From: Macrostomum lignano | Taxonomy: Eukaryota | Length of the DNA stretch: 64,000 bases | Assembly: GCA_002269645.1 (NCBI GenBank) | Contig: NIVC01000217.1 | Location: forward strand, 496,001 to 560,000 | Direction of reading: 5' to 3' | Notes under the pieces: model-generated | The model's database searches: none | Seen by the model: the letters and a program-made list of their open reading frames with translations, nothing else | Told to the model about the DNA's origin: nothing | Shown here: positions 25,110-64,000 of the stretch, piece by piece | Position numbering within the stretch: position 1 is the stretch's first letter | Layout of the letters: every line of letters begins with the position of its first letter | Program-made: the position numbers and the translations under genes

Positions 25110-28100
25110 TTATTCAGATAGGAACTCGTGCTGCCACAGCTCCTGTGCTGAGCTTCTGTCCCTGCGGTCCTTGGCGGTGCAGCGGCTGTAGAAATCCCTC
25201 AGCTCTGCGGACCGGCCATCTGGAAGGGCAGGGGCACCGCTGTTAGCGATTCTCAATGCGACTTGATAGATGCTTTGGTTGCCTCTGAAGGGCCTCGCGC
25301 CGGAGGCCATCTGGAAGACCGAGCAGCCGAACGCCCAGATGTCCGACTCTCTGCTGTACTGCACGCTGTCCGACTCTCCCGCTCCGAGCAGCTCTGGTGC
25401 CATGAAGTTCAGAGTGCCTTTGGGTGACTGAGTGGAGGCTGAGATGTGGCTGACTGACTGCTCCAGCTTGATTGACAAACCAAAGTCGATTAGCTTGATG
25501 GTTATGTTGTCGGCGCAAATGATGATATTGCTGCAGTTTATGTCTCTGTGGATCACGGGTGGCCTCCTATTGTGCATGTAGAGCAGGGCGCTGCAGATCT
25601 GCGAGCGGTCGGTCAGTGAGCAGTCATCATTCATGGGAGCATGGAACAGAAGCATCAAGGATGCACAATGCTCACCTGCTTGCTGAAGTCTCGAATCTTC
25701 AGCTCGTTCAGAGGCCTGTGGTTGATAAACCTCTCTAAGGTTTGGCCGTCCAGCAGCTCCATGAACACAACGACTGTGGCGGGCTCCGGCTGAGCGATGT
25801 GCAAGAACCTGACGATGTTGGGATGCCGCAGTCGGCACAGGTTTCTCTCGCTCTCGATAGCTCTGTGGATCTCCTTGCTCACAGAGTGCAGCTCATCACC
25901 GAGCTGCACAGGCAGTCTGAGAGTCTTGGCAGCGCACGTGACGTCAATGTCAGTGATGACTTCATGGACCTCACCGAAGCCTCCGCGACCAATGAATCGA
26001 ACGACGTCCCAGCGCTCCCGGAATGGTGAGCTGAGTTAGGTTTGTTAAGGATGTTTGAACTGAAGCAACAAGGAACTATTTTCTGATTTTTCTGTGCTCC
26101 CAGCTATTTCTGCCTTAGTTTCCCCTGCGCGAAAATGCATGCACTCACAGAGATTCCTCGAAGAAAATCAAGTCCTTGAACCTGGAATAAACGAAATAAA
26201 TGTAGTAACTTATCTTCGTGTCTACATGTAGTATTTTTTAAACCGCAGCTGGTTCATTCAGGAACTGAACTTGTCAAAGCAAACGTGCTTTGGACGCTAT
26301 ACATATTATATAATAATCAGCAAGATATGAAATCGGCAGTCAAAGTGTACTGCAAACACCCACAATGCATCTCAATCAAAACTACTCATGCATGCACTTT
26401 AAAGTCGGAGTTTCTCCATTCTTCATGGAAACTCACCCAAGCAGCAGATCAGCCAGTTCGGTCTTCTCATTCTGTCTGGCCAAATCCAGCGCAGTCTTGC
26501 CATCTTTGTTCTTCAGTCTCCAATCTGACCCCGAGTCCAGCAGAACCTGGCTGACTGCAGCGGCGGTGGTGAGGGTCGCGGAAGTGGCTGCCTCCATGAG
26601 GGGCGTGGATTCCCAGTGATCTAACGCGTTGGCGGAGGCTCCAGAGTCCAGCAGAGCGGAGGCTGCGGCAGAATTGCCAGCCTTGGCTGCATGGTGCAGG
26701 CAACTGTCAGCCCATCTATCCGCATAGGTGGGGTCACCCAGCTGCATCAAATGTTTCAACAGAGCCCCATCACCGCTGCTCTGAGCTGCTAGCATCAACG
26801 CGGTTTGACACGACAAGTCAGGGAGGTCGCAACTGCCGCGGGTCGCCGCTCTCTGCAGCCCCGCCGAGTCGTCCGCCTTGGCCAGCCGCTGCAGTTCCTG
26901 TCGATCCGCTTCCTCCTGCAAAGGCGAGCGGGAAATTTGAGCACAGCTGCTCAGTTGCAGCCGCATCGGCACTGCAGATGCCGCTCACCTGGTCTGTCAG
27001 GCCGAAGATCATGCCGCTTTTGATAACAAACAGTCGCATCTCCCTGCAACAACAAAACAAACTGTAATTTTTTGCCTTTCAATTTATGACAATTAATCAT
27101 AATTATTTACTACTCATTACCCAATCTGCAAGCATATGAAGATTCTAAGTGGTTTTCAACCTTCCTCTGCCCTGCGCAGGGCCCTGCTTGGACTCAATCG
27201 CAGGGACATCAGGGCGGTGACCATGGCTCTCTCAGGTCATGGCTGTTTTGCCCGGCATCGATACCTCCAGGGAAAAATCCACAGTGAGGAATGCCCTGTC
27301 TGCCTCTCCGATGTCAAGAATGCGGAGCACTTCATCTATGAATGCCCCGCCTTTACTCAGGACAGGCTCACCTACTTCGGCCCAAACCCGGACCTCTCCG
27401 ACGTTTTCAGGCCCAAGAATCTCTGCCAGCTCGTCTGCTACCTAAGGGCTACCGGGCGAGCGACCATCCACCTCCTGGACTCTCCAGAGGGGGACCGCGC
27501 TGCGGACAACGGCACCACCGGAACTCCCTGCGCGACACCGCTGCACTAGCTGCCCGTGGTCGCCAGGGGTTAGTGAAATCGGAGCCCCCTGCTCCGATAA
27601 GTCAAGTAAGTCAAGTGGTTTTCAACAATTAGCATGGCGATAGCGTTTCAGATTTCTCACACGAAGCTTATTAAGCTGTTTCCTTCGAAGCAGCATATAC
27701 TGGCATTCACGCAAAAAAATAAGTAATTTTAGTGATGATTTAACTAATCGACCAGTTTATTGACTGATTCTGGCTTACCCAGCCGAATGCGGCAATATTG
27801 AGACTAAAATTAAACAAAACTGCTCACTCACCGCTCGATGTAGCTGGCCAGCTCTGAGTGGCCGCTGAGCCTTGCCAGATCCGAAGCCGTCCGACCCTCG
27901 CGATCCTTCAGTCCGAGCAGCCGTGACCTCTTCGAGTTTCCGCGCCTACTGCACTCATTGAACCTCATCTGCCTGAGCAGGTGCAGCAGGTGCTTGGCGC
28001 ATTTCCAGCTTCCAGTCCGCGCCGCCTCCATCAGCGGAGTGGTGTCGTTGTCGCTCCGCACCCACTTCGCATCGAACGACATCAGCGTCAGCAGCCGCAG

Positions 28101-30695: not shown

Positions 30696-33025
30696 CCTTA
30701 TGATTACCAGTGGCATGCTGTGCATGCCATCGTTCATTCTGTCAATTGACCATAGACAGATTTGAAGTCGATGGGAAAGCGAGTTTAGACAGAATCATTG
30801 TCTGACTCAACCAAATGGAATGCTATGCATGCCAAGGCCAAAAAACTGTTTGTATTGTCATACTGCGTCGGAGTGTCACAAAACAAATAGAAAACGACAT
30901 ACATTGCATGCACAAAGGTAAATCTTGAGAACATAAGGGCAAATGAAGCTGCATGCAAGTGAATGAAAATAATTTTAGCAACAGTTCGATTACAGTTTCA
31001 GCAAAGCGCCAGCAATCAGTTAGCCGAGTGCCACTCAAAGAAGCACGGCTCCAGGCAAAGCCCAGGCTGACCGTCACAGCCTTGGCAGAAGTAGACGGTC
31101 CGCTTTTTCAGTCTGCGCTGGTAACAAACTCGGCAACGCTTGGTAGGCCGTTCTTGTGCTGCGGTAGCGGGTAGCTTTTCCAGCCGGTGATGAATTTCGC
31201 CTGGCTGACGGGGAAGAGCCTGACGCTTAACTCTCGATCGACCATTTCCGCTGCTTTCAATCAAGTGCTTTACACACCTTTCAGTGTAGCTGAGAAAGCT
31301 CATGGATCCACCTAGATGTCGGTACACAATCCAGGAGTTGCGAACCAGCTGCTGTAGCAGAAACACCGCCAACTTTACGAACCATTTGTGCGTTCGGCGG
31401 CATGCGCTGTAAGGCTGGGCTGCGGCATCCATCCGATCCACACCTCCCATGTTGTGATTATATTGCAAAACCGAGTTGGGCTTCAGCAGCTGCTGCTCCA
31501 CACCACCGCGCAGTACCCGGCTAACCAAAGAGCTAGCAGCCGTTGAAGCGGAGTCCAACAGATAGACCGTCTTTGTTCCTGAGCTTCGCCTGTCAACCAG
31601 CTTCACAGCAAGGATGTCACCATGTCGGGCAAAGGAATGACTCGGTGGTTGCAAGAGCATATCTCGCAGAATCGGTGGAACGCCTCGGTCTTTGCGAACG
31701 GTCCCAGTTAAGGTTGTTCCTCTGGTCAGAAGGAACTTGGCCAGTCGCACCGATGAAAACCAACTGTCGCAAAAGACCCGATATCCAAGGTCCAGAATGT
31801 CGCGACAAAGTTCTACGACGACTCTCTCACTGATTGAGAGCTGCGGCACATCGTTGCCGAACTGTTCATTCGCAATGGTGGTTGAATGTATCAGATAGTT
31901 CCACATGTAGCCTGTAGAAGACTCTGCAAGGCAGTACAATTTGATGCCAAACTTGGCTCTCTTGTTGGGCATGTACTGCTTAAAAATCAGCCTCCCTTTA
32001 TAGAGCAGCAGCGCTTCATCAACGGCAATGCTTTGACCGGGCAGGTAGCTGTTCTTGCAAACTGTCTGGACCATGTCTAGGAACGGCCTGATCTTGCACA
32101 AGGGATCACCAGCGTCGAAGTCAAGACAGTCATAGCAACGCAGCCATGACATGATTTGTTGAAACCGCGAGCGAGGAAGCATCTTCATGCTTTGAAGGTA
32201 GGGATGAAAGTAAAACGGGTCCGTGGACCAGTAAGCCGTCACCTCCGGTTTCTGTACAACTCCGGTATATAATATAACGCCGATCACCTTCTTCATCTCA
32301 GAAACAGTGCAGGGCTTCCACGTTCTGAGCCCGTAAGGCAGTTCATCATCTCCGTGTTCTTGAAACTTGGCAATATCCAGCTGCGCTCTCTTGTTTGTCC
32401 ACATGCACATCTGAAGCAGCAACTCATCGGGTAAAAGTTGCTCGAAAATGGCTGTCCAGCCGTCGTCAACATCAGCAGGTACGGAGAATCCCGGATTGAC
32501 TCCGCTTGCCCCGAGGAACTCGGGAAGGGAATTAGCTCGAGCATCAGTCTCTGGAGTTACTGATCTCCAATCATCGTGCATCATTCCCTGATCGTCTTCC
32601 TCCGATCCATCGTTGCCTTCTTGATTTTCGTCACCGTCCTCTCCCTCGCTCTCGGCAGTGAAAAATGAGTCATCGCTCGACTCATCGCTCGATTCGCTGT
32701 CGAGGCCCAAGTTTCACAAGGCTTGCTTGGCTGCTTGCCGTCGCTGTCTGACCGCTTGCATTGTAGATTTGGTAAGTTGGGGTGGTGAGCTAAGGAGGCA
32801 CCAGTAAAAATTCTTGCAGTTAACTTTTCATGCCTGTATTCCCTCCCTCTTGCCTTTTTTCTAGGTTGGCCATAGACTATTCTCCAGTCAAAGATGTCAC
32901 TTCTCCTGTTGAGAAAGTGTTTTCTTGCCTCTGCATAATAAAGCAACTGTTTTGAAATTCGAAGTGTACAGCGCAGATCTAAATTGTCTATGGCATGCAG
33001 TGCTTGCCATTTGGTAAGATAGAGA
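30696..33025 (-). mobile_element. piggyBac DNA transposon
   Basis: TTAA at 30692-95 followed by TIR ccttatgattaccagtggcatgctgtgcatgccat; degenerate complementary TIR at about 32990-33025; transposase ORF inside. Confidence 0.85.
31016..32761 (-). pseudogene. piggyBac transposase (PGBD4-like), ORF intact except an in-frame TGA at codon 16
   Basis: Catalytic motifs AVDE, FCDSWF and MGGVDRMD; acidic N-terminus; C-terminal Cys-rich domain CRVC...CQGC...LCLEPCFFEWH; ATG at 32761, TGA at 32716-14. Confidence 0.9.
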
Positions 33026-33178: not shown

Positions 33179-34677
33179 CAGGTGATCCAGGAAGGTCTCC
33201 CAGATTACAAACAGAGTTTTCTCTGCACTGGATTGATGGATTGGGCTGAAACTTGACCTGCTCAAACTTTATTCTGAATATGATTTTTGTCTAAAAATCT
33301 TAGCAATTGCTAAAAAAATCACGAAGTTACAGCAGTTTTTCTAAAAAACACCGTTTTCACTTACTGATGAGCACATTTCATTCCAGACTTACACGACTTA
33401 CACGCCAGTTGAAAGATTTAAAATGGCATCCTGGCTGGATGAATTGAAGAGTCCGCTGTTGGTCCAGCGGCGATGGCGTCGTGAGTTCAATTTGGCTGCC
33501 AAACAACGCCCTCCAGATGCTAAGACCATCAAAGATGCACTTAAGGTGGCCTGTGAGTTTGGTTTGGCTCGACGACCAATTTCTGGGCGTCCACGGACTG
33601 CTCGTTCTGCTGAGAATGTGGAACAAGTTGTTCAATACTTCAAGGAGCGACCACAACAGTCAGTACGTCGTGCGAGTCGGGAGCTGAATGTTAGCCATCA
33701 GTCCATCCTTCGTGTGCTGGATAAGAGTGGCTTTCACCCCTATCGCATGCGCCGTCAACAGGCAATGAATGAGGCCGGCCATGAGGCGCGAGTGCTATTC
33801 GCAACTGATATGCTGGAGATGTTTGACAGTGATCCTGAAATGTTAACCAACATCATTTTCTCTGATGAGGCTCATTTCTCCCTGCATGGCCACACTAACA
33901 CCTGGAACTCGCGGTATTGGGCCATTGAAAACCCAGATTTCTCTATCCAGATGCCCCTTCACAGACCACGCGTCTCATGCTGGGCTGGAATTTGGTCCCG
34001 CGGCATTGTTGGACCTTTCTTCTGTGAGGATGCGCAGGGTGCAACTGTTACGTTGGATTCTGAGCGGTACGTGGAAATGCTGGATACAAAGTTTCTGCCT
34101 GTGGTTCAGAATTACGAGGCATTTTTTGCTGGTGACTTGTGGCTGATGCAGGATGGTGCTCCAGCCCACATCGAGCTTAATGTGCGTGAATGGATTCAGC
34201 ACAACTTTGAGGAGCGCGAAATCGGACGCTATGAGACAATTCATTGGCTTGCACCCAGTCCTGATCTCAACCCTAAGGACTTCTTTGTCTGGGGATGGGT
34301 GAAGGACAACGTCTACCGACAGCCAGTGGACAGCCTGGATGAGCTAAGGCACGGAAAACGCAGCTAATGCATGATATGCCAGTGGATTTCGGTGTCAACA
34401 GCCTTAATAGCTTTAAGAAGCGCCTGCAGACTTGTATCGACAACAAAGGTCATCATGTGGAGCACTGACTAACAGTTGCATAGCAGATTGTGCTAAAACC
34501 CTACTGATTTAACAAAAAACTGCTGTAACTTCATGATTTTTTTAGCAATTGCTAAGATTTTTAGACAAGAAATATTTTCAGAATAAAGTTTAAGCAGGTC
34601 AAGTTTCAGCCCAATCCATCAATCCAGTGCAGAGAAAACTCTGCTTCTAGTCCGGGAGACCTTTCTGGACCTCCCTG
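33179..34677 (+). mobile_element. Tc1/mariner DD41D (rosa-like) transposon with a C-terminal frameshift in the transposase (33423-34470)
   Basis: TA TSDs at 33177-78 and 34678-79; TIRs of about 165 bp; FSDEAHF, QDGAPAH and SPDLNPKDFFVWG with 41 residues between D2 and D3; the tail KKRLQTCIDNKGHHVEH is in a shifted frame. Confidence 0.92.
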
Positions 34678-35908: not shown

Positions 35909-37291
35909 TCCCCCTCTCTCCTCTCTTTGTCCTTGTCTCTTTCCCTCTCTCTCTTCTTTTTAGTTCGCTTTTAAAGTTATTTTGCGGTCTGTGCATCGGG
36001 AGCTGCGGATAACGGTGGTAGGGGAAATGGGGAGACAAGGAATATGAGGAGACATGGAGATGAAGGCTCAAAAGTAATTTGTGACAAAAAGACATACGCT
36101 CGTAAGTAAAGAAACAGTTTGGGGTATGCTCGTAATTTGACCAAAAAGGGAAATACTAAATTGCGATCATGCCAACCTTTTTTTGCTTTTGTCTTTTTGT
36201 CAAGAATTACCTTTGAGCCTGCTGCAATCGAGTGCTAACGTTATTCAATGTTAAAATGAACATTGTATACCAAAACTCTGTCACAGAAACTCTTGTTTGA
36301 GTTGAGATTTGTCTGAGAGCTCATTCTAACTCTGGTGAGACTGGTATGAATTCAGTTCCCCGTTACACTATTTAGGGTTGCTATCAGGGGTGAGATTTTC
36401 ACTGAATGCTTGAAATGGTCTCTCCTCCTTCCTCCACTTCTGTCCGCCCCTCCTATCCTCGTGCTCTCCCTCCTTCCCTTTCCTCTCTTCCTTCTCCTTT
36501 CTCATTTTAAGGAAGAGACCTGCACCAGTGATTTCGGGGAGGTGAAAAGGCGTCAACTTTTCATTTTATAAAAGCAAAATCTGAAGCAATTGTTCGCACT
36601 TTGCTGCTTCGATCCAACCAAAATACACTACTGTCAAGTTTTACCGCGAATAGTAGCATCTTGTCTTGAAAAGATTGTTTCGATCCCGTAGCCACATTTT
36701 CCCCACTAAGGCTTGAATTACTGGCTCAATTGACGTGGAAAATGATTTACCCCCTTTTAGACCCGCGTAATATGCAGCTTAAACTGGGCACCCGATGATA
36801 TCAGTAGCGAATGAACTCAAGGTCTTACTGGCCGCATCAGCCGCCGCCAAAGAATCCGCTGCCAAGTGCAGCACTGTACTGCTGTTGCTGCTGCTGCTGG
36901 TGGGGTCTTGTAGCCTATGGTTAATTTATCTGGCCGGGCAACGCTTTTGCCCCCATTCTGGAGTGTCTCTTTATTTGTGTGGCTATTTTAAATACACCCG
37001 TTGCAAGCCCTCTCTCCCTTGCTAAGTTTGGCGAAGCAACCACGAAATTATCGTTTACACTTTCAAATTTCCAGCTAAGCCGCCACCGTTCGGCCTGTCT
37101 TAATGAGCGAGGTCACCGACGTGAAAAAAATTATACGCTTAAGACCGTCAAGTAGGTCTTTTTTGAATGATGAATGTAGTTTAAATTCCCATAGAAGAGT
37201 TTTTACCTGTCGAACTTTAAGCTCATTCTTCTGAACTTTACGAAAGGAAGGTTAACACTACCGCACTGTTGTCTTTATTATTGCTTTTCAG

Positions 37292-40200
37292 CTCTTCTTG
37301 AAAGTAGTTCTGCCGATGATTTCAAATTTGAAGATGAACTATGTAAGTTTTACAACCAAGTTTTGCTAAAATTTTTCCTTGCAAACGAACTAAAATACGC
37401 GATGTACAGATTTTACACTGTTGAGACTGGTAGTTTCAAGTAGAATCCTGTAGCTATTTCTGCTTTGCTCAGAGCGGCGACCCTTACTACTAGAGTTATA
37501 GAACTTAACTAAGCTACAATAGCAATGAAAACCCGCTGATCCCTTGTTGAATAACCAACTATGAAAAACCCTCTGCCAAATAATGATATTTAAGGTTCCC
37601 GAAGATTGGCTCTGTTCTTCGACGCTGGCAGTGAGTCAGTGACAGATGAGTACGCCGACTTTCTAAAAGAGTGCAGTTTTAACGTAAAGAGGAGCCTGGA
37701 ACAGCAGTATGAAAGCAAACTGGGCTCGTGTCTATCCGACTTCGTGAACAATTCCGAGGTCCAGCAGCTAATTGTAGTCGTGATAGCTGGCAATGCTTTC
37801 ATGAAGGACGTCCTAGATTTCATGACAATGGGTACATTTCCCAACTGCCAAAACAGATGTTTATTATTTTGTCGCGCTGGTGAAGAAAGCCCGGATGACA
37901 CGAAACTTGCAAACGAATTTTCGAATGCGAATTTTAAATACAAGTGTACAACTATCGCTTACGTCGTGGCTAAGGAAACTAAAAGCGTACAGGGCTTCTA
38001 TAGAAGCTTTCTGGATGACTGCAGGTGCAGTTGGGAGACTAAAAGTATATTTTCTATCCTGGAGACGGCATTGAAGCTACCACTCGCTTACGAGTCCCTT
38101 TCTCTGTATCATAGAGAAGGAAAGCTCGGTGGAGATTTCCTGCGCGACATTTTCAAATTTATCAGGGAACCCAAGAGCAACCTTGATGAAGTTGATGCCT
38201 TACCAGCAGCATCAGAGCAGGCTGCTCAAGACAAACCGACTGATTGGATGCGCGAGAATGCCTCAATAATCTATCCGAATCGGCGCAATCCGAAAAAGCC
38301 TCGAGCGTTGGTCATCATCAACTATGACCGAGGAGACTCTCTATACTCTGCTCTGCAAGTTGACCGCAGCAGAGTTATGCGTATGCTAAAAAATCTTGGC
38401 TACATTGTAACGGACGTGCAAACCCGCTCCAATGACGCCTTGAAAAGAAGGATCGAGCTTTTTTCAGAAGATACTGAACACGGTGACTCCTGCATCCTTG
38501 TCGTGCTGTCCCAGACGCAGCAGCAGCTGAGCAGCTCTACTGTCATGAATTTGTACAAAAGCTTGGCTATTGGCGAAAAGCTCGAGGCCAAGCCCCGACT
38601 CTTTATTCTGCACGAGTGGGATGTCACAACACTGCAGACAGACTCTGTTACTGATGGTTTCAGCAGCAATACTTATGAGATCATTGAAGATGCTGTGGAC
38701 GGTTTGCAGGCCTATTTTCGCAAGCATGATTCAACCATCAAGGTTCATCCACACAGCGGCATGGTGTTCGGTCGATCAGTTAGTAGCGATGTGACAAGAG
38801 CAGAGGGCAGCGCTTTTATTCAGACACTGTGCGAAACTTTCAGACAGTATGGGCACACAGAGGACGTGGCCTCTATGATTACCATAATTAATGAGCACAA
38901 ACGACTAGATGAATCTGTGCCCAAGTGGTTTATTCAGACTGGCAAGCTCTTTTATATCATGGGAACAGACGGAATCCAGGGTAAGAGCACTTTTTTTAGC
39001 TCAATGCATGTATACTTTTCAATTCGAACTTTGCCAAAAGTGACTTCAACTTCGGCAACACGATAAATTATGACTGTCACTGTTACTGTCAAAGTGACTT
39101 AAAATTCTTTGTGATCAATATCATTGTAGTTCTGTAGCTCAGACTGCTTGTGCCACCGCCAACATTTTTTGGTGTTAGGGCGCGACACTGGTGGTGTAAA
39201 TTTTGACCTAACGGTTCCTTCTAGTTGCCTTTAAACAATACAATCTTGAATGACAAATCTGTGATTGACTGCTTTGGCCGTGTTTACATTTATGTCGAGG
39301 TACTTCACTAGTCGTCTTCAGTCTCTCCTTGTTGTTGTCAAAATTGTTCACTTTTGCCAAAGTCGAAATTGAAAAGTTACAACTATGCAGAAATCATTAT
39401 TGCATAATCATTTGCACTATTTTGCTTTTAGCTACCGGTCAGGAGGTTTCGCAACAAAGTCTACAGAAGAAATCTAAAGAACCTAAACAAAGTCTAGAGA
39501 AGAAATCTAAAGAACCTAAAAGCGCCAGAATTGGTAAGTGGCATATTAAATTATCGAGAAACACCTCTTACGACGTAGAGATCCGATTCATGCGTTATAG
39601 CCATATAAAGCTATGTGCAACATCTTTGCAAGACTACTCACTTCTAATTATACTGGTATCTGTTCCGTTTTTTTCTGCGATGTCCAAACATTTTTATCCT
39701 ATGAAGAATTATTTCATCTAAAAACCTTCTGATAAGTACATGTATTTCAGAAAGATACGCTTGAGTTATAAACATTATTAGATTCATGTATTAAAGAACA
39801 ACTTTGCTTGCATGAGTCAATAAAACTCGATAATCTCAGCAAAGCTCAGCCGTACTTGCACTTTTTAATTTCAGATCGAACAGGGTTTGTGATGATTCTC
39901 ACCGAAGGACAGTTTGATGGGGCCAGAAACTATCAGATGTTTCTGGAGTATGCAGCCTTCAAAGTGCTCTTCGATTACACGGATGGCAATTCGAGCTCAA
40001 TCAAGACAGCCATCAGGCTTCCAAAAGAAACTGAAGGAAATGTTGTCCTTTATCTAATTGTACGCACGCATCGCAACGACAACGTCTTGCAAGAAATATT
40101 CGATGAACTTTCTAAACAGCAATCGTCTCAAAAGTGCAGCAGTAGCATTTTGCTTATTCTTTGCGAAGTGTCCGAGTCTGAAGAGAATTTCGCGAACACT

Positions 40201-41337
40201 CAGATGCCAGAGGAGCTACCCGAGAAGTTCAGCGTTGTCAGAGTTTGCAGGAATCGGTGCGGCGTGATTGAATTTCTGGACTCCCTGCTGGAATCTCCCA
40301 GGAAGAACATCTCTCTCAATGGCAGCTTTGTGGTTGGTAGAGATTTTTCCTGCCATTCCTGCCATCACGGCATAATGCACTGCAAAGTCAATGATGAAAA
40401 CCCAGGCTGGAGGAAGAGAATCACTTGGCTTGAAAACTTTTATATAGAAGAGAGTTCATCGCACCCAAATCTGACTTCAATTGACGTTAGTGACGACACG
40501 CAGACGAGACCAGCAATAAGAGGTTCTCTCCGATTAGAGACTTTCAGAAGCGAATGGAATGCACCTGGATTAGACACTCAAGAGTGCAAGGCTGTAGCCC
40601 TCATCGTTCACAACGTTGTCTTTCAGAAAAAGGAACTATCTACTCGGTTCGGAAGTCAGTACGACTGCCAGCGAATGGCTGACACTTTGCTCAGGCTTGG
40701 CTACTCAGTGAGCATCAGGTCGAATCTCACCAAAGTAGAAATCGAAAGCGAATTAGACATGTTTTGCAGTGACGCACGACACGGCAGCTCAGTCGTAGTT
40801 GCTTTTATGTCTCACGGATGTCTCGGTGAAGTAGTTGGTTTCGACGGCGAATCAGCAAAGGAAAGTAAAATTCTAAAGAGAATTTCCAAAGGAAAACGCA
40901 CAAGTAGAAAGCAGCAATTGGTTATCTTTGAGAACTGTCGAGACCCTGGTCGATGGCCTAAATCAGAGCTGGCGTTCTTTCCTGACATGATCGTCGCTCA
41001 CTCGACTTCGCCGGATGAAAGCAGCTACCGAATGACAGACAGAGGCAGTCGGTTCATCCAGTGTCTGTGCACTGTTCTCGACCTGTTCGCCGACAAGTGC
41101 GACATTGCATCAATGGTTCCTATCGTTAATTATGTGGTGCAAAACGCCACTTTTAATCTGGGCATCAGCCAGCTGCCCTGGTGGTCTGTGCAGACAAGCA
41201 AGAAATTTTGGATTCGAGTCAATGAGCCTCCTCAAAGCAGTCGTGAATCGCGCCAACAAGCCAATTCAGCTAGGAACCAAACAACGAATGACTGCAGGGT
41301 TCAGGTGACGGAACTTCTTCAAAAAATGCGGTTGTAA
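37292..41337 (+). CDS. Multi-caspase-fold protein (peptidase C14 family), exons 37292-37342, 37595-38980, 39432-39533, 39875-41337; start exon upstream not found
   Basis: Three GT-AG introns, all phase 1 (t|gtaagt..taag|gt; g|gtaag..ttttag|ct; g|gtaagt..tttcag|at), give an open frame of about 1000 codons. Caspase motifs occur in both large exons. Confidence 0.72.
37595..38980 (+). CDS. Exon encoding a degenerate caspase fold plus a catalytically dead caspase domain
   Basis: PRALVIINY...LKNLGY.V...CILVVLSQ (His absent)...KPRLFILHEWD (QACRG replaced)...GSAFIQTLCE. Confidence 0.85.
39875..41337 (+). CDS. Exon encoding a degenerate caspase fold plus a putatively active caspase domain
   Basis: VALIVHN, STRFGSQYD, VAFMSHG (His codon 40813-15), IFENCRD (Cys codon 40936-38), MIVAHSTSP and SYR...GSRFIQCLC. 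Confidence 0.9.
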
Positions 41338-41641
41338 TAATCTACGCAGAGGCAGTTTATCAATTTGACTATTGTGGTGACTGAATAGGTTTAATTGCTT
41401 ATATTGTAGCTACCAGTGGCTATATTTTAATCCTTACATTTTTTCTTAGCGGTTCAAAATCTGATGAATTTCTGTGAGAGCGGTATATATGATTTTAACA
41501 TTCAAACCATAAAAAATTTACTATTGACAACTGTTGGGACAATTATAGATAACGCCTGTTTATAGGCGTTTGTAAATTTGTTTTACTTTGAAGACTTTTT
41601 ACACAAATATTAAATTAATAAACTGCTAGTTAGCTTCTTGG

Positions 41642-41976
41642 TTAGAGGCAGGGGGCTGTTTACCCTGGTGCACTTTAAGCGACATTGTCACACAATCAGC
41701 GAGAGGCATTACTGCCCATTCCGCCGGCTCCCCTAAGCAGGCACACAAGCAAGCGCGCGGATATGTATACAGTCATTCGTAAAGGCACACACGCACACAG
41801 GGGTGTACAGTGGCTTTAACAATTTTTATCGCTAGGCATGTACACTTTACTGTGTCTTGAGGTTGGCCCTTAAGGCCGTTACTTGCATGAGCAGAGCCAA
41901 GCTGACTGCACTTGGAATCGAGTATGGGCCGCTGGCACATCAGAACGCCGCGTTAGACCACAAGGCTACGGCCCCC
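41642..41976 (-). mobile_element. tRNA-derived SINE family A, full-length copy
   Basis: Reverse strand ggggccgtagccttgtggtctaacgcgg...ctcgattccaagtgcagtca head; body matches 48606-48962. Confidence 0.8.
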
Positions 41977-43093
41977 GTAATAAATTACTACGTAGTATAA
42001 TAACATAATTATTACAAAAGGAGCGTGTTTTCATTAGTGCCTCGATGGAACAAATTTAGTTTTTATTGTTTAATGAAAGACGATATACAGTGACTGTTCT
42101 AAACAGTTTAAGCCAGTCTAAGTTAAAAACAGCAGCAGAATTGCTCTCGCTATAACTAACCGTTGCCGAATTTTTGATTGAGAAAAACGTTATCCTAGTG
42201 TATGTTTTCATTATTAAAACTCATTATAAATGAATACAAAGTTTTCCTGATTTTTAATGTTTTATTGAAAGAAGTTAAAGAAATACTTCTAACATTGGAG
42301 TACGAGTAAATGTTATAGTTGTATTTAATGTAATCGATCTTTTGAATTTGAATGTATCAAAATCGCAAACTGCGACTGGCCCTCGATTGTAGTGCATCAC
42401 TGAATTATATTTTTCTCTTACTCTGATTCATTTATTTATAGTAAACATAAAACTAACAGGCTCGTAAATTGCTGATTCCTAATTCAATTGTTTATTTAAA
42501 TATGAACGATTATCTAATCAAGTACAACAACTCAATTCAAATAAATCAAAGGAAACTAAGAGTTTTCCGCTTGTCACCGAATGTCTGCTTTTTTATTTTG
42601 ACCAACGTTTAGTATAACTTAGCTAGTTAATATATAGGTGTATCTACAAGTGTATAGGAGTACGAGTGCATATAGTAGTATAGAAGTATATATACACAGT
42701 TACTAGCTTAGCTAGCTTAGAATTAGTTTTACATTACAAAATAGCTTTATTGTATATATTAACTTTCCATCCAAAAATCCAAATTTCCCCTTTTCAGATT
42801 AATTACACAAAAAATTCTTATATAACCAAACCTTATCTGGTATTCGAAGAAACGATCGAACTCAGTATCGATGGCTGATTTTCCTGACACATTTGAGACC
42901 GAAAGCCCAGCAACTAGTAAGTGCGAACCTACAATAAAAATATTAGCAAATAAATTCGAACAAACATAGGCTGATTGATTCCTCTGAGTAATTATTCCCA
43001 CATTTAAATTTTCAGTATTGCACGAACTTTCAACAGTTTCAGGTCTGTTAGATGTTTAAAACAAAATTTATTACTAATTTAAAATCATTCTCC

Positions 43094-61571: not shown

Positions 61572-64000
61572 TTAGTTCGTCAAAAGTTGTCTGCAGATAA
61601 GCAAGATTAGTAAGCCGATCCACGTGCATCCGCCTGTTGAGCGCAGGGTCTGGGAAGGGCTGCCATAGTGACCGAGTCGATCGCCTAAAAATATAAAAAT
61701 TTAAACTGTCATTTATATTTTGTTTTTTTTTGTTTTAATAGTATAGCACTCTCTGAATTTAGCCTTCATTGAACTATATCGTCGACTATTTTATTCAATT
61801 TCTGCTGAAACTTTGGAGAAAGCACGAATGACGAAGTGACGAATGACGATGACGAAGCACGAATTGTGACGTCTGCACTCACTGGAGAGCCTGTCAAAGT
61901 AGTAAACACCGAGAAAGCCCGGAGAATTGTATCGATCGTTGCTGACAAACACTACTCGAACACAGGTGGCTTGGAACTTGTACACAAAGGCTTTGCCCCT
62001 CTCCGGACGGCCGCAAAGCACGTTCTGACTGCTGGCCAGACCGATCGGCCGCGAGCAGTCATCGGCTGTCACAAAGTCACTCTCATCCGGGATACACCTG
62101 CAGTAAAACAAATCAGAAAGCATTTTCAGGTTGGTTATTTAACAGCAAAGCTCTCCCTGGATCTTAAATATGCCAGTTAATGTTAGTTTTTAATTAACAG
62201 TGCTTTTGATTAATAAGATTTAAACAAGAATCGCAATCAGCAGGTTGCCAGCAGTATCTAGTCTTTTTGGAGCAAACCGGATAAATTTAAATAATTCATT
62301 GAATCCGAAATTCGATCACTTTGAGCTCTATGGTATCTTTGTTTACGAGGTACAGTTAATCAAAGCTGATATTTTTCACCTAACGCCTTAGTTTTAATTT
62401 ATATATTGTTGATGAAGTTCCATACCGATAAAAAGTACTTACGCTCTTCGAGATGTCTCCGTGTCAAAGTTAGTAAACTCAATTCGCGTAATCTCGTGTG
62501 GCCTAGCTCGAAATATGTAAGTGCAGGTGAGCTGCTCAGGGTAGGCGTAAGGATAGTTGGGGCTTGAGAAATTTCCGCTGGACGCCCGGTTGCTATGAAA
62601 CTCAAAGTGGCAGCCGAGAGACTGGTTCTGCATCTTGTGCTCGCCCAGTATACCAAAATCTGCAGAGTCAAAATCGATTAGCTTCGATAAGATTCTTGAA
62701 TTTTCTATTTATTCAATGTCGGAAGAAGATAAATTCAGGCCTCGCTAAAATCCTACCTTGCACGAAGCTGTACTTGAACCTGAGACCCCGTCGAACTTTT
62801 GAAGCTTTCTCTGTGTAAAAGCTGAGTTTCAGCTTGGGAATCCGGGTGCTCATGATTCGCACCGGCCTAGAGCTTCTAACCTCGCAGAACGGCTTGTCAA
62901 CAGCGTCTACCTTGCCGCCAGACATTTGCATCTCGATGTACTTCGTAATGGTCACCTGATCCTTGGAGGTGCACTCGAGTGCCGTGCTAATATCTGTGGT
63001 TCTTGACTCCACGTCCAGCTCTTGAATTTCTAAAACCACTCTCTCTGTTTTGTTGGCTCTGCCCAGAAAAGTCCAGGAGCAGTGCAACTGCTGGTACCCG
63101 TCCGGGTAGTTGGGCGAATGCAGCACCCCGCTTGAGGTCTCATCGCTGCGAATCTCCCTGTTGGCTGAGCAGCCCAGCGTGACCTGCTTGCTGTCCGTCG
63201 CAACCATGCCCTGGTCCTTGGGCGTGTCCAACTCATGTTTGTCGACCCGCTCCGTGAAATAATAGTTGCCATTGAAGCCTCTCTCGCCGAGGGTCAGCCG
63301 GTCATCGGTGTGGAACACCAGAGTCAGGTGCGGCCCGGTAGAATAGACGGATTCGCTGTATTGTGTGCCGCAAAACACTGCGTTTGGGTTGCCAAGTGCA
63401 CTGCTGCTGTAGTACACCAGGACCCTATCGCCCTGGTCTGAGCTGCAACTGCAATAACATTCTATCGATGCAATGTACGTGTATATTAGATGCCTAGAAA
63501 TAGCTCAATAATGTCTCCCAACCTTCCAGTGACGGGCCCGTCCAGTCTGAAGTCAATGAACCGAATGTGGGCCATCTCGCCTGGTCTGCCGATGAACCGA
63601 TATGTAAACTTGGCCAGTCTTGGATATCCCTTCGACTCAGAGTAGTTAACGCTGCTGAACACTCCTTGTTTGCTTTGACTGCTTCGGAACTCGATAGTGT
63701 GCTCAATAACTTTGTTTGGCAAGATTCCTGCGAGATTAGTGTCACGTTACAAGGTGGTACGTTACAAGGTGATTCATGATAATGGGACTATCTGTAGTAA
63801 AACCTAGCCAAAATTTCACTCACCGTTTGCGCTGAGCACGTCCCTGTCCAGCGGTCTGGTGGCCTGCAGTTTGTGCCTGGCAACAAAGCCATATCGAGCT
63901 GAGAAACCCTGACCAATGACAGAGTCTGCATTCGAGACAAATTTCACTCTGAAGTAGGCTTCTTGACTAACTGTTTGCACTTTGGAATCGAATCTGCAAT
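61572..64000 (-). CDS. Multi-CUB-domain extracellular protein, 3' part (exons >64000-63824, 63727-63523, 63448-62757, 62659-62443, 62097-61883, 61684-61572), probable GPI-anchor tail
   Basis: All introns GT-AG with matching phases (1,2,1,2,1); CUB motifs SPNYP..Y....CTYIF, FCG, VF.SN....GF..YY; the last exon ends TWIGLLILLICRQLLTN*. Confidence 0.82.

What the first reader, a model, noticed from the sequence alone, without database searches (positions are those of the whole stretch)
37292..41337. One spliced gene encoding four tandem caspase folds (pseudo-pseudo-pseudo-active)
Seen: the two caspase ORFs of the track are linked by a 102-nt exon (39432-39533) and preceded by a 51-nt exon; all three introns are GT-AG and phase 1, giving one open frame of about 1000 codons. 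Each large exon holds two caspase-like units (see next finding), and only the last has SHG plus a Cys motif. Established: caspases are activated by dimerisation, and inactive paralogs (cFLIP, C. elegans CSP-2/CSP-3) regulate active ones in trans, each chain having one catalytic fold. Inference: a single chain with several dead folds fused to one live fold could be a pre-assembled, intramolecularly regulated caspase platform. I do not recall this architecture being described.
Basis: partly seen in the sequence, partly recalled or inferred. Interest (0 to 1): 0.9.

Follow-up and report, generated by a model that had tools for sequence, protein, structure and literature searches.

The report
Flatworm gene with four caspase folds
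This is a real five-exon gene of the flatworm Macrostomum lignano whose 1016-residue protein strings together four caspase-like folds, only the last with catalytic residues. It extends the "dead caspase fused to live caspase" design already known from corals and mammals rather than being a new kind of thing.

Summary
The window is Macrostomum lignano DNA. All four introns are GT-AG and phase 1, giving 1016 codons. A 97%-identical 1016-aa model is already in UniProt.

Pfam finds caspase domains only in units B (His and Cys lost) and D (SHG and Cys present). Units A and C have no Pfam hit. They are homologous to each other (hhalign 92%) and align weakly, in register, with the caspase large-subunit (p20) half. 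AlphaFold models built without any caspase sequence in the alignment match solved caspases best (TM 0.5-0.6).

A paralog 34% identical has the same exon plan. A roughly 90%-identical paralogous copy keeps the whole frame, with in-frame indels only.

Single chains with a dead and a live caspase domain are published (coral caspase-X, mammalian caspase-16).

What is new is the cryptic caspase-like prodomain, the four-fold chain, and a family of M. lignano paralogs in the top hits. Intramolecular regulation remains inference. I could not test domain packing or RNA junctions.

The parts
37103..37151 (+). Coding exon 1 (49 nt), ATG start, donor GTAGGT, phase 1. Encodes MSEVTDVKKIIRLRPS.
   Evidence: the same N-terminus is in P0001 and in P0159; the exon is present in paralogous locus L001.
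37292..37342 (+). Coding exon 2 (51 nt), phase 1 to phase 1, no ATG in frame.
37595..38980 (+). Coding exon 3 (1386 nt). Encodes unit A, the A-B linker and unit B.
   Evidence: The equivalent single exon of 1353 nt, flanked by phase-1 introns, is in paralog P0006.
37597..38169 (+). Unit A (aa 35-225): cryptic caspase-like fold. No His. Cys126 lies in LLFCRAG near the catalytic-Cys position.
   Evidence: No Pfam hit. hhalign A vs C 92.4%. A/C profile vs caspase profile 78.6%, in register over strands beta1-beta4. AlphaFold pLDDT 68, about 80 over residues 1-140. Foldseek best hits are caspases, TM 0.52-0.60.
38185..38196 (+). DEVD (aa 231-234) followed by Ala, in the predicted flexible linker between units A and B. 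Possible caspase cleavage site.
   Evidence: Present in P0001 and in the L001 copy. Absent from distant paralogs.
38299..38979 (+). Unit B (aa 269-495): recognisable caspase domain with both catalytic residues replaced (SQT for SHG, HEW for QAC).
   Evidence: Pfam Peptidase_C14 E 3.7e-12. BLASTP against D E 3e-9. hhalign against caspase profile 99.6%. The same losses occur in paralogs P0005, P0006 and P0007.
39432..39533 (+). Coding exon 4 (102 nt), phase 1 to phase 1. Encodes a Lys-rich linker ATGQEVSQQSLQKKSKEPKQSLEKKSKEPKSARI that contains a 33-nt unit repeated twice (39453-39520).
   Evidence: The paralogous copy L001 has one repeat unit, an in-frame 33-nt difference. Paralog P0006 has a 126-nt linker exon at the same place. 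Models P0002 and P0158 skip it in frame.
39875..41337 (+). Coding exon 5 (1463 nt including the TAA stop). Encodes unit C, the C-D linker and unit D.
   Evidence: The equivalent 1433-nt exon is in P0006.
39877..40461 (+). Unit C (aa 531-725): cryptic caspase-like fold. His595 (RTH) and Cys626 (LILCEV) lie at or within one or two residues of the catalytic dyad positions. The loop carrying the substrate-pocket Arg is absent.
   Evidence: No Pfam hit. AlphaFold pLDDT 83.4, pTM 0.86, element order b1-a1-b2-a2-b3-a3-b4-b5-a4-a5-b6. Foldseek best hit CED-3, E 2.6e-4, TM 0.55, then caspase-3, -6, -7, drICE and c-FLIP.
40588..41226 (+). Unit D (aa 768-980): caspase domain with His843 (40813-40815), Cys884 (40936-40938), Arg787 and Arg915. 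Glu882 replaces the usual Gln (ENCRD instead of QACRG). The loop between the Cys and strand beta5 is short.
   Evidence: Pfam E 2.8e-31. Residue-by-residue alignment to human caspase-3, E 1e-12. Coordinates. Lowest dN/dS of the four units, 0.30.
41617..41622 (+). First AATAAA after the stop codon. Candidate polyadenylation signal, about 280 nt downstream.
   Evidence: pattern only; not tested.

Best explanation
This is one protein-coding gene of Macrostomum lignano (five exons, 37103-41337, + strand). It encodes a cytosolic 1016-residue protein built from two copies of a two-fold unit.

Each unit is a highly diverged, catalytically dead caspase-like fold (A, C) followed by a recognisable caspase domain (B, D). 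Each unit is carried on one large exon flanked by phase-1 introns. A short phase-1 exon encoding a flexible Lys-rich linker joins them.

The first unit is wholly dead. B has lost His and Cys. The second unit ends in the only domain with a complete caspase dyad and both pocket arginines.

Shown: the gene structure, conservation of that structure in paralogs, the dead or live status of the residues, and the caspase-like predicted folds of A and C.

Inferred mechanism: caspase domains become active by pairing through their last strand, and a dead partner can substitute (c-FLIP with caspase-8). On that basis the dead folds most likely act as built-in partners of D. They would either hold it in, or keep it out of, the active paired state without an external adaptor. 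Release by cleavage in the linkers (DEVD|A between A and B; an acidic DD pair between C and D) would be one way to switch.

Single-unit paralogs (cryptic fold plus live caspase: P0010, P0061) suggest that the cryptic fold is this family's prodomain and that the four-fold chain arose by tandem duplication of the unit.

My confidence in the anatomy is about 0.85. My confidence in cis-regulation by pairing is about 0.4.
For: Gene model: open frame across four GT-AG phase-1 introns. A 97%-identical 1016-aa UniProt model exists. Partial model P0159 joins exons 1, 2 and 3.

The same plan occurs in paralog P0006 (34% identity): six exons, all introns phase 1, an [A+B] exon of 1353 nt, a linker exon of 126 nt and a [C+D] exon of 1433 nt. 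P0006 carries a BOX15 locus tag from assembly GCA_002269645.1. I take this to be the RNA-seq-derived annotation described in PMC5730564. The link between tag and paper is my own knowledge.

Paralogous copy L001 (about 90% nucleotide identity) keeps all splice sites and a 1001-codon open frame. Its indels are all in frame (6, 9 and 33 nt, a net +9-nt local rearrangement, and 6 nt).

dN/dS between the window gene and L001 is 0.56 overall and 0.30 in D.

Folds: Pfam hits for B and D. hhalign gives A vs C 92.4%, and the A/C profile vs a caspase profile 78.6%, E 1.7e-5 (53%, score 34, with an enlarged alignment). Reversed and block-shuffled controls scored 31 or less.

The only natural proteins hinted at by an A/C profile against PDB sequences are caspases.

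AlphaFold models of A and C were made from alignments of A/C-type modules only. Foldseek ranks caspases, CED-3, drICE and c-FLIP first for both.

Active residues of D come from the alignment to caspase-3.

Precedent for cis-regulation: removing the dead domain of coral caspase-X increases killing; caspase-16 modelling.
Against: I could examine no RNA reads. M. lignano has trans-splicing and polycistronic units.

One annotation of a paralogous copy covers only unit D (P0004, 318 aa).

The A/C evidence is moderate. The alignments have ten sequences from one species. TM is 0.5-0.6 and Foldseek E-values are 1e-4 to 1e-3. There is an extra helix between beta4 and beta5. One block-shuffle control reached score 31 against the real 34-40.

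dN/dS of A (0.76) and B (0.63) is not clearly below 1 on so few differences.

This copy has Glu in place of the pocket Gln (ENCRD). Near-identical copies read QNCRD and QNCLD, so the site around the Cys is not tightly conserved.

Packing between units was not modelled. The pairing mechanism rests on analogy.
Confidence: 0.6

Rival explanations
1. There are two gene products from one transcription unit. An A-B protein would be a free dead caspase acting in trans, like c-FLIP. A separate C-D caspase would be made by spliced-leader trans-splicing at the exon-5 (or exon-4) acceptor.
For: About 7% of M. lignano transcription units are polycistronic with internal trans-splice sites (PMC5730564). Without splicing, ORF 1 runs to a stop at 39066. 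An in-frame ATG lies seven codons into exon 5. One paralogous copy is annotated as a short D-only protein (P0004).
Against: The donor at 38981 and both flanks of the 102-nt exon are conserved in the roughly 90%-identical copy, and the frame is kept across them. The linker exon exists at the same place in paralog P0006, and P0005 and P0006 are read as single ORFs. The ATG at the start of exon 5 is not conserved; P0005 and P0006 have no Met there. P0004 starts inside unit C, not at an exon boundary, and its locus has an intact 1001-codon frame.
Confidence: 0.1
2. Units A and C are not caspase-derived. They would be a generic flavodoxin-like or TIR-like alpha/beta prodomain, so the protein has two caspase folds, not four.
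For: There is no Pfam caspase hit in A or C at E up to 10. UniProt names one paralog fragment (P0008) 'TIR domain-containing protein'. Caspase and flavodoxin-like folds share the 2-1-3-4-5 core, so TM 0.5-0.6 is not decisive. CheY-type receivers also appear in the Foldseek lists. The top hit of the sequence profile against PDB was a designed Rossmann protein. The A/C profile against the single D sequence gives nothing.
Against: No TIR hit appears in Pfam for any paralog, in the PDB sequence search, or in the top 50 structural matches of either model. Caspases head both Foldseek lists with TM 0.5-0.6, against 0.28-0.36 for other folds, and alignments cover 200-230 columns, meaning both caspase halves. 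hhalign places beta1-beta4 in register with the p20 half and beats the controls. The A/C HMM repeatedly picks the start of caspase domains in unrelated animals. A sixth strand follows two helices, as in caspases.
Confidence: 0.15
3. This is a decaying duplicate. The window copy would be one of several recent copies in a duplicated genome and no longer functional as a protease.
For: Overall dN/dS is 0.56, and 0.76 in A. Glu replaces the conserved Gln next to the catalytic Cys, and near-identical copies differ in this pentapeptide. The neighbouring paralog present at the related locus is reduced here to its first exon within the window. Transposase ORFs lie 3-6 kb upstream.
Against: There are no stops or frameshifts in 3051 nt. 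All splice sites are intact. All indels relative to the roughly 90%-identical copy are in frame. D has dN/dS 0.30. His, Cys and both pocket Arg residues are present.
Confidence: 0.07

Closest known systems
Coral caspase-X (Acropora millepora AmCaspase Xa-d; PMC4715348)
   Same: A single chain with an N-terminal caspase domain lacking His and Cys, followed by a typical active caspase domain. Removing the dead domain increased cell killing, which suggests cis-regulation. The same paper notes one A. digitifera gene prediction with four caspase domains.
   Different: Caspase-X has two folds, both recognisable by sequence. It is a cnidarian lineage-specific family. No sequence relationship beyond the caspase domain emerged in my searches. 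The flatworm chain has four folds, two of them invisible to Pfam, and a dedicated linker exon. The coral four-domain case is an unverified prediction.
Mammalian caspase-16 (PMC12198278)
   Same: Its prodomain is predicted to fold as a caspase domain. It arose by duplication of caspase exons, lost the catalytic site, and is proposed to pair with the C-terminal active domain. This matches the single-unit flatworm paralogs (P0010, P0061) and the C-D half of this gene.
   Different: It has two folds, not four, and is of vertebrate origin and clearly independent. In caspase-16 the internal similarity is still visible in the sequence. Here A and C need profile and structure methods.
c-FLIP(L) with procaspase-8 (PDB 3H11, 3H13)
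   Same: A dead caspase-like domain pairs with a live one and sets its activity. The c-FLIP protease-like domain is among the structural matches of both A and C (TM 0.50 and 0.46).
   Different: c-FLIP acts in trans as a separate chain recruited through death effector domains. The flatworm protein has no DED or CARD, and its dead folds are on the same chain.
Two-CASc caspases of bivalves (Mytilus coruscus; PMC10967218) and scattered multi-caspase gene predictions
   Same: These are tandem caspase domains in one predicted protein. Similar predictions turned up in a firefly, a Drosophila species, a fish, an ostracod, mites and a snail.
   Different: Most are unverified predictions of repeated, apparently intact caspase domains. 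None shows the alternating cryptic and recognisable pattern.
M. lignano paralogs (P0006 A-B-C-D; P0005 B-C-D; P0007 A-B-D; P0154 B-C-D; P0010 and P0061 cryptic fold plus live caspase)
   Same: They use the same module types and the same phase-1 exon plan where checked.
   Different: They carry different numbers and orders of modules. In P0006 the last domain has the canonical QACR motif.

Membership tests
Caspase family (MEROPS C14A, Pfam PF00656), unit D | Significant match to the Peptidase_C14 profile above the curated cut-off | tested here: met
   109.5 bits against a cut-off of 21.4, E 2.8e-31, profile positions 2-232 of 233.
Caspase family (MEROPS C14A, Pfam PF00656), unit D | Catalytic His (SHG) and Cys (QACxG) at the conserved positions | tested here: met
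   His843 and Cys884 align with His121 and Cys163 of human caspase-3. The pentapeptide is ENCRD rather than QACRG.
Caspase family (MEROPS C14A, Pfam PF00656), unit D | Asp-binding pocket residues (Arg64, Gln161 and Arg207 of caspase-3) | tested here: inconclusive
   Both Arg residues are present (LSTRFG, SYR). Gln is replaced by Glu882 in this copy but is Gln in near-identical copies and in paralogs.
Caspase family (MEROPS C14A, Pfam PF00656), unit D | Cleavage after Asp, abolished by mutating the Cys | not testable with these tools
   Needs recombinant protein and peptide substrates.
Pseudo-caspase (caspase domain without dyad), unit B | Peptidase_C14 profile match, with His and Cys both replaced | tested here: met
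   46.9 bits, E 3.7e-12. SQT replaces SHG and HEW replaces QAC. The same losses occur in three paralogs.
Caspase/hemoglobinase fold, units A and C | Sequence-profile relationship to caspase domains | tested here: inconclusive
   No Pfam hit. hhalign profile against profile 53-79%, E 1.7e-5 to 1.4e-4, in register over beta1-beta4 and above all controls, though one shuffle came close. PDB sequence search gave caspase-1 at E 0.13.
Caspase/hemoglobinase fold, units A and C | Three-layer alpha/beta fold with six strands; solved caspases as the closest structures | tested here: met
   On predicted models only. A: drICE E 4.7e-4, caspase-4 TM 0.58. C: CED-3 E 2.6e-4 TM 0.55, caspase-3 TM 0.56/0.63. 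Element order is b-a-b-a-b-a-b-(a)-b-a-a-b. Sheet order and strand direction could not be read out.
Caspase/hemoglobinase fold, units A and C | Catalytic dyad | tested here: not met
   A has no His. C has His595 and Cys626 near the dyad positions, but they are not conserved together (P0006 unit C has Phe for Cys). The loop bearing the pocket Arg is deleted.
Single-chain dead-plus-live caspases (caspase-X / caspase-16 type of architecture) | Caspase-like fold without dyad placed N-terminal to an active caspase domain on one polypeptide | tested here: met
   C-D and, more broadly, A-B-C-D. One-polypeptide status rests on gene models and frame conservation, not on RNA reads seen here.
Single-chain dead-plus-live caspases (caspase-X / caspase-16 type of architecture) | Common descent with caspase-X or caspase-16 | not tested
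   No phylogeny was made. All relatives carrying A/C-type modules among the 150 listed hits are M. lignano proteins, which argues for an independent origin.
TIR domain (suggested by a UniProt name of paralog fragment P0008) | Match to TIR profiles or TIR structures | tested here: not met
   No TIR family at E up to 10 in the window protein or in eight paralogs. No TIR chain in the PDB sequence search or in the top 50 structural matches.
Initiator caspases with death-fold prodomain (CARD or DED) | CARD or DED N-terminal to the caspase domain | tested here: not met
   Only PF00656 was found in the full protein.

The most novel reading that the evidence does not exclude
The chain may be a self-contained caspase activation machine. 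The four folds would pack as two intramolecular pseudo-dimers (A with B, C with D, or a dimer of such pairs). The single live site in D would then be switched by rearrangement or linker cleavage (DEVD|A at 231-235, DD at 737-738) without any adaptor such as APAF-1 or FADD.

Alternatively, or additionally, unit C may keep a second, unconventional His595/Cys626 site.

The cryptic caspase-like fold would then be a new class of caspase prodomain, one that recruits by caspase-caspase pairing instead of death-fold interactions, within a flatworm-specific expanded family.
Probability: 0.2. Interest if true: 0.75.

Novelty: new variant of a known kind. Interest (0 to 1): 0.55.

Why it matters
Caspases are switched on by pairing of their catalytic folds. 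How dead paralogs tune that pairing is a live question (c-FLIP, caspase-16).

A natural chain with one live and three dead folds would be a compact system for asking how cis-linked partners set caspase activity. So would its family of two-, three- and four-fold relatives in a transgenic, RNAi-amenable flatworm.

It also shows that caspase surveys based on Pfam domains undercount caspase-derived folds. Half of the folds here are invisible to Pfam, and the recent lophotrochozoan caspase survey does not mention this family.

If the gene is only a fast-evolving lineage-specific duplicate with no special regulation, the finding is a modest annotation improvement.

Tried and rejected
1. Direct sequence tests for A and C led nowhere. 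Pfam at E up to 10 gave nothing. BLASTP of A against C gave no similarity. The A/C profile against the single D sequence gave 0.5%.

2. I considered a TIR reading of A and C, because UniProt names paralog fragment P0008 a TIR protein. I rejected it because there is no TIR hit in Pfam, in PDB sequences or in structural matches.

3. The word-indexed protein search was of little use. It returned only near-identical M. lignano models and missed paralogs that the exhaustive search found. I therefore could not establish orthologs outside M. lignano. Absence from other flatworms is not shown.

I used P0001 and exon-internal segments instead.

5. I did not attempt a full-length model. Only two structure jobs were allowed and no coordinates or error maps are returned, so packing between units could not have been read.

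6. I searched the window for a second family member. Only the first exon of the P0006-type neighbour is present.

7. A literature search for the gene identifiers found nothing. Searches for three or four caspase domains found only the Acropora paper. One literature search was wasted because 'CASc' matched 'cascade'.

8. I considered the alternative donor at 37346, which would put an ATG of exon 2 in frame. I rejected it. GTAAGT at 37343 is the better donor, and the upstream exon with ATG matches database proteins.


Full report
WHAT IS THERE

The region holds two long + strand ORFs, 37606-39066 (486 aa) and 39808-41337 (509 aa). Every junction has AG before the exon and GT after it, and every intron is phase 1.

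The 51-nt exon (37292-37342) starts at an acceptor and has no in-frame ATG, so the gene must begin further upstream. The database protein P0001 begins MSEVTDVKKIIRLRPSTLLESSS. It is a UniProt 'CASPASE_P20 domain-containing protein' of Macrostomum lignano, 1016 aa, 97% identical over 100% of the query.

That N-terminus is encoded at 37103-37151 (ATG, donor GTAGGT, phase 1). With this exon the gene has five exons and 1016 codons and ends at TAA 41335-41337. The window is therefore M. lignano DNA, and a model of this protein already exists for a near-identical copy. The model for this exact copy (P0003, 608 aa) has odd internal deletions and looks mis-predicted.

IS IT ONE GENE?

I could not look at RNA reads, so I used comparative evidence.

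(a) A paralogous locus was fetched as L001 (GenBank NIVC01000896.1). It aligns to window 37498-42976 at about 90% nucleotide identity.
- All five exons and all splice sites are conserved there.
- All length differences inside exons are in frame. They are 6, 9 and 33 nt, a local rearrangement netting +9 nt, and 6 nt.
- The spliced frame is open for 1001 codons.
- That locus is annotated only as a 318-aa protein starting inside unit C (P0004). The annotation is short, not the gene.

(b) The next gene downstream in L001 encodes P0006 (1017 aa). It is 34% identical to the window protein in a single alignment covering residues 32-986.
- I reconstructed its exons exactly: six exons, all introns GT-AG and phase 1.
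- It has a 1353-nt exon for units A and B, a 126-nt linker exon, and a 1433-nt exon for units C and D. This is the same plan as here (1386, 102 and 1463 nt).
- P0005, P0006, P0007, P0010 and P0061 carry BOX15 locus tags, and L001 belongs to assembly GCA_002269645.1.
- From my own knowledge I take this to be the M. lignano annotation built from RNA-seq assemblies with experimentally placed transcript ends (PMC5730564). No tool output links the tags to that paper directly.

(c) The in-frame ATG seven codons into exon 5 is not conserved in P0005 or P0006.

(d) The partial model P0159 joins exons 1, 2 and 3 as I do.

Against this, the same paper reports that about 7% of transcription units are polycistronic with internal trans-splice sites. 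Some gene models also skip the 102-nt exon in frame (P0002, P0158). I put the two-product reading at about 0.1.

HOW MANY CASPASE FOLDS?

I split the protein into unit A (aa 35-225), unit B (269-495), a linker (496-529), unit C (531-725) and unit D (768-980).

Pfam finds Peptidase_C14 only in B (E 3.7e-12) and D (E 2.8e-31).

Unit D aligns with human caspase-3 at E 1e-12. His843 and Cys884 fall on the catalytic pair, and Arg787 and Arg915 fall on the two arginines of the Asp pocket. The Gln before the Cys is Glu882 in this copy, so the motif reads ENCRD. Near-identical copies read QNCRD or QNCLD, and paralogs read QACR, QCCR or QLCR.

Unit B has SQT for SHG and HEW for QAC. Paralogs show the same losses but keep motifs such as HGDSC, KPRL and VHPxSG, so B is an old, maintained dead caspase.

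Units A and C have no Pfam hit and no BLASTP similarity to each other. With the paralogs' modules added, profile comparison gives the following.
- A against C: 92.4%, E 5e-7, over 132 columns. They are homologous.
- The pooled A/C profile against a profile of 65 caspase domains: 78.6%, E 1.7e-5, over 100 columns. An enlarged alignment gives 53%, score 34.
- The alignment runs from the first strand to the fourth. It places the nearly invariant Cys of the LL(I/F)xC motif on the catalytic Cys after a two-residue gap.
- Controls: reversed profiles scored 18-20. Thirty block-shuffles had a median of 21 and a maximum of 31. The real match wins, but not by much.
- An HMM of A/C against all PDB sequences gave a designed Rossmann protein (E 0.005) and then insect caspase-1 (E 0.13, in register). 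It gave no TIR domain.
- The same HMM repeatedly touches the first 70 residues of caspase domains from unrelated animals.

I then predicted structures for A and C separately. The alignments held ten A/C-type modules only and no recognised caspase domain, to avoid circularity.
- Unit A: mean pLDDT 68, about 80 over residues 1-140, pTM 0.68.
- Unit C: mean pLDDT 83.4, pTM 0.86.
- Both show strand-helix-strand-helix-strand-helix-strand, a short extra helix, then strand, two helices and a sixth strand. This is the order of elements in caspases, apart from the extra helix where caspases have the inter-subunit loop.

Foldseek against the PDB ranks caspases first for both models.
- Unit A: drICE (E 4.7e-4, TM 0.52/0.60), caspase-4 (TM 0.58), caspase-11, CED-3, caspase-3 and c-FLIP (TM 0.50). 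CheY-type receivers score only TM about 0.33.
- Unit C: CED-3 (E 2.6e-4, TM 0.55), caspase-3 (TM 0.56/0.63), and caspases 6 and 7, drICE and c-FLIP. Other folds score TM 0.28-0.36.

The values are moderate and rest on predicted models from shallow, single-species alignments. I could not read sheet order. I put 'A and C are caspase-derived folds' at about 0.8. I put the rival, a generic flavodoxin-like or TIR-like prodomain, at about 0.15. The UniProt name 'TIR domain-containing' for paralog fragment P0008 found no support.

FAMILY AND ORIGIN

The exhaustive search lists 468 proteins at E up to 0.001. Of these, the best 150 were shown. Every listed protein that carries A/C-type modules is from M. 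lignano.
- P0006: A-B-C-D.
- P0005: B-C-D model.
- P0007: A-B-D.
- P0154: B-C-D with a Cys-rich insert.
- P0010 and P0061: one cryptic module followed by a live caspase.

The basic unit is thus [cryptic caspase-like fold + caspase]. That is the architecture reported for mammalian caspase-16 and, with a recognisable dead domain, for coral caspase-X.

The window gene is two such units. Each unit sits on one exon with phase-1 borders, which is what tandem exon duplication would leave. A modules are closer to A modules of paralogs than to C modules. The duplication therefore predates the paralogs.

CONSTRAINT

Between the window gene and the L001 copy, dS is 0.10. dN/dS is 0.56 overall: 0.76 in A, 0.63 in B, 0.50 in C and 0.30 in D.

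The live domain is the most constrained. The dead folds evolve fast, and on these counts A is not clearly below neutrality. However, the exclusively in-frame indels and the recognisable modules at 30-40% identity among paralogs argue for retained coding function.

HOW IT LIKELY WORKS

The anatomy above is shown. The rest is inferred from established caspase biology. Caspase domains are activated by pairing through the last strand, and a dead partner can serve in that pair (c-FLIP with caspase-8). In coral caspase-X, removing the dead domain raised killing. For caspase-16, pairing between prodomain and catalytic domain has been modelled.

I therefore think the dead folds act as built-in partners that set the state of D without a death-fold adaptor. 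None is present.

Possible switches are cleavage at DEVD|A in the A-B linker (aa 231-235) and at the acidic DD pair in the C-D linker. Similar pairs are present in P0005 and P0006. The loop after Cys884 is unusually short. This argues against the usual activation by cutting between large and small subunits.

None of this was tested. I rate the cis-pairing mechanism at about 0.4.

COMPARISON AND NOVELTY

The idea of a dead and a live caspase fold on one chain is published: coral caspase-X in 2016, caspase-16 in 2025, and bivalve two-CASc caspases. The Acropora paper even mentions a four-domain prediction in A. digitifera, unverified. The recent lophotrochozoan caspase survey covers M. lignano but reports only a kinase-prodomain caspase there. 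The gene identifiers appear in no searchable paper.

The new points are these.
- A caspase-derived prodomain that Pfam cannot see.
- A chain with four such folds whose plan is conserved between paralogs.
- A family of paralogs with module variants that, among the listed hits, is confined to M. lignano.

I file it as a new variant of a known kind, with interest 0.55.

Noticed in passing
window 42718-42980 (ATG 42871, donor after 42916): The promoter region and first coding exon (MADFPDTFETESPAT) of the P0006-type four-module paralog are present 1.5 kb downstream of the gene, as at the related locus L001. Homology stops inside intron 1, and no other exon of that gene is found in the remaining 21 kb. 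The neighbour is truncated, or split by a large insertion, in this copy.
   Followed up: partly
window 38185-38196: An exact DEVD followed by Ala lies in the linker between units A and B. It is conserved in the near-identical copies and absent from distant paralogs. By my rough estimate an exact DEVD would occur about once in a hundred proteins of this length by chance, so it may be a self- or cross-cleavage site.
   Followed up: partly
window 39453-39520: The 102-nt linker exon contains a 33-nt unit repeated 2.1 times (97% match), encoding QSLQKKSKEPK twice. The paralogous copy has one unit. Copy number therefore varies in frame.
   Followed up: yes
window 40930-40932: Glu882 replaces the Gln of the QACRG motif in this copy (ENCRD). 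Copies 92-97% identical read QNCRD and QNCLD. The residues around the catalytic Cys differ among very recent duplicates, which could mean relaxed constraint or changing specificity.
   Followed up: partly
window 40345-40389: Unit C holds a Cys/His-rich stretch, FSCHSCHHGIMHC. It looks like a metal site, but the roughly 90%-identical copy has HSTSVIGELNGIMHC there through a local rearrangement, so it is probably not a conserved site. Paralog P0154 has a much longer Cys-rich insert at a similar place.
   Followed up: partly
window 31016-32710 (- strand): An intact 564-aa ORF encodes a piggyBac-type transposase (DDE_Tnp_1_7, E 5.9e-69, plus its zinc finger). It lies 4.4 kb upstream of the gene.
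   Followed up: no
window 33423-34367 (+ strand): A 314-aa ORF has weak Tc1/mariner-type transposase matches (HTH_Tnp_Tc3_2, DDE_3), both below the curated cut-offs.
   Followed up: no
window 25110-25838 and 26433-26972 (- strand): Adjacent ORFs encode the C-terminal half of a protein kinase domain (E 1.4e-33) and ankyrin repeats (E 8e-14). They are probably exons of one ankyrin-kinase gene.
   Followed up: no
window 62713-63417 (- strand): An ORF with a CUB domain (E 9.8e-12), probably an exon of a secreted or membrane protein gene.
   Followed up: no
L001 10001-10957 (GenBank NIVC01000896.1): The public annotation of the paralogous copy (PAA75221.1, 318 aa) covers only unit D. The locus nevertheless holds all five exons and an open 1001-codon frame. 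The UniProt model of the window's own copy (P0003, 608 aa) also looks mis-spliced. Both records under-describe the gene.
   Followed up: yes
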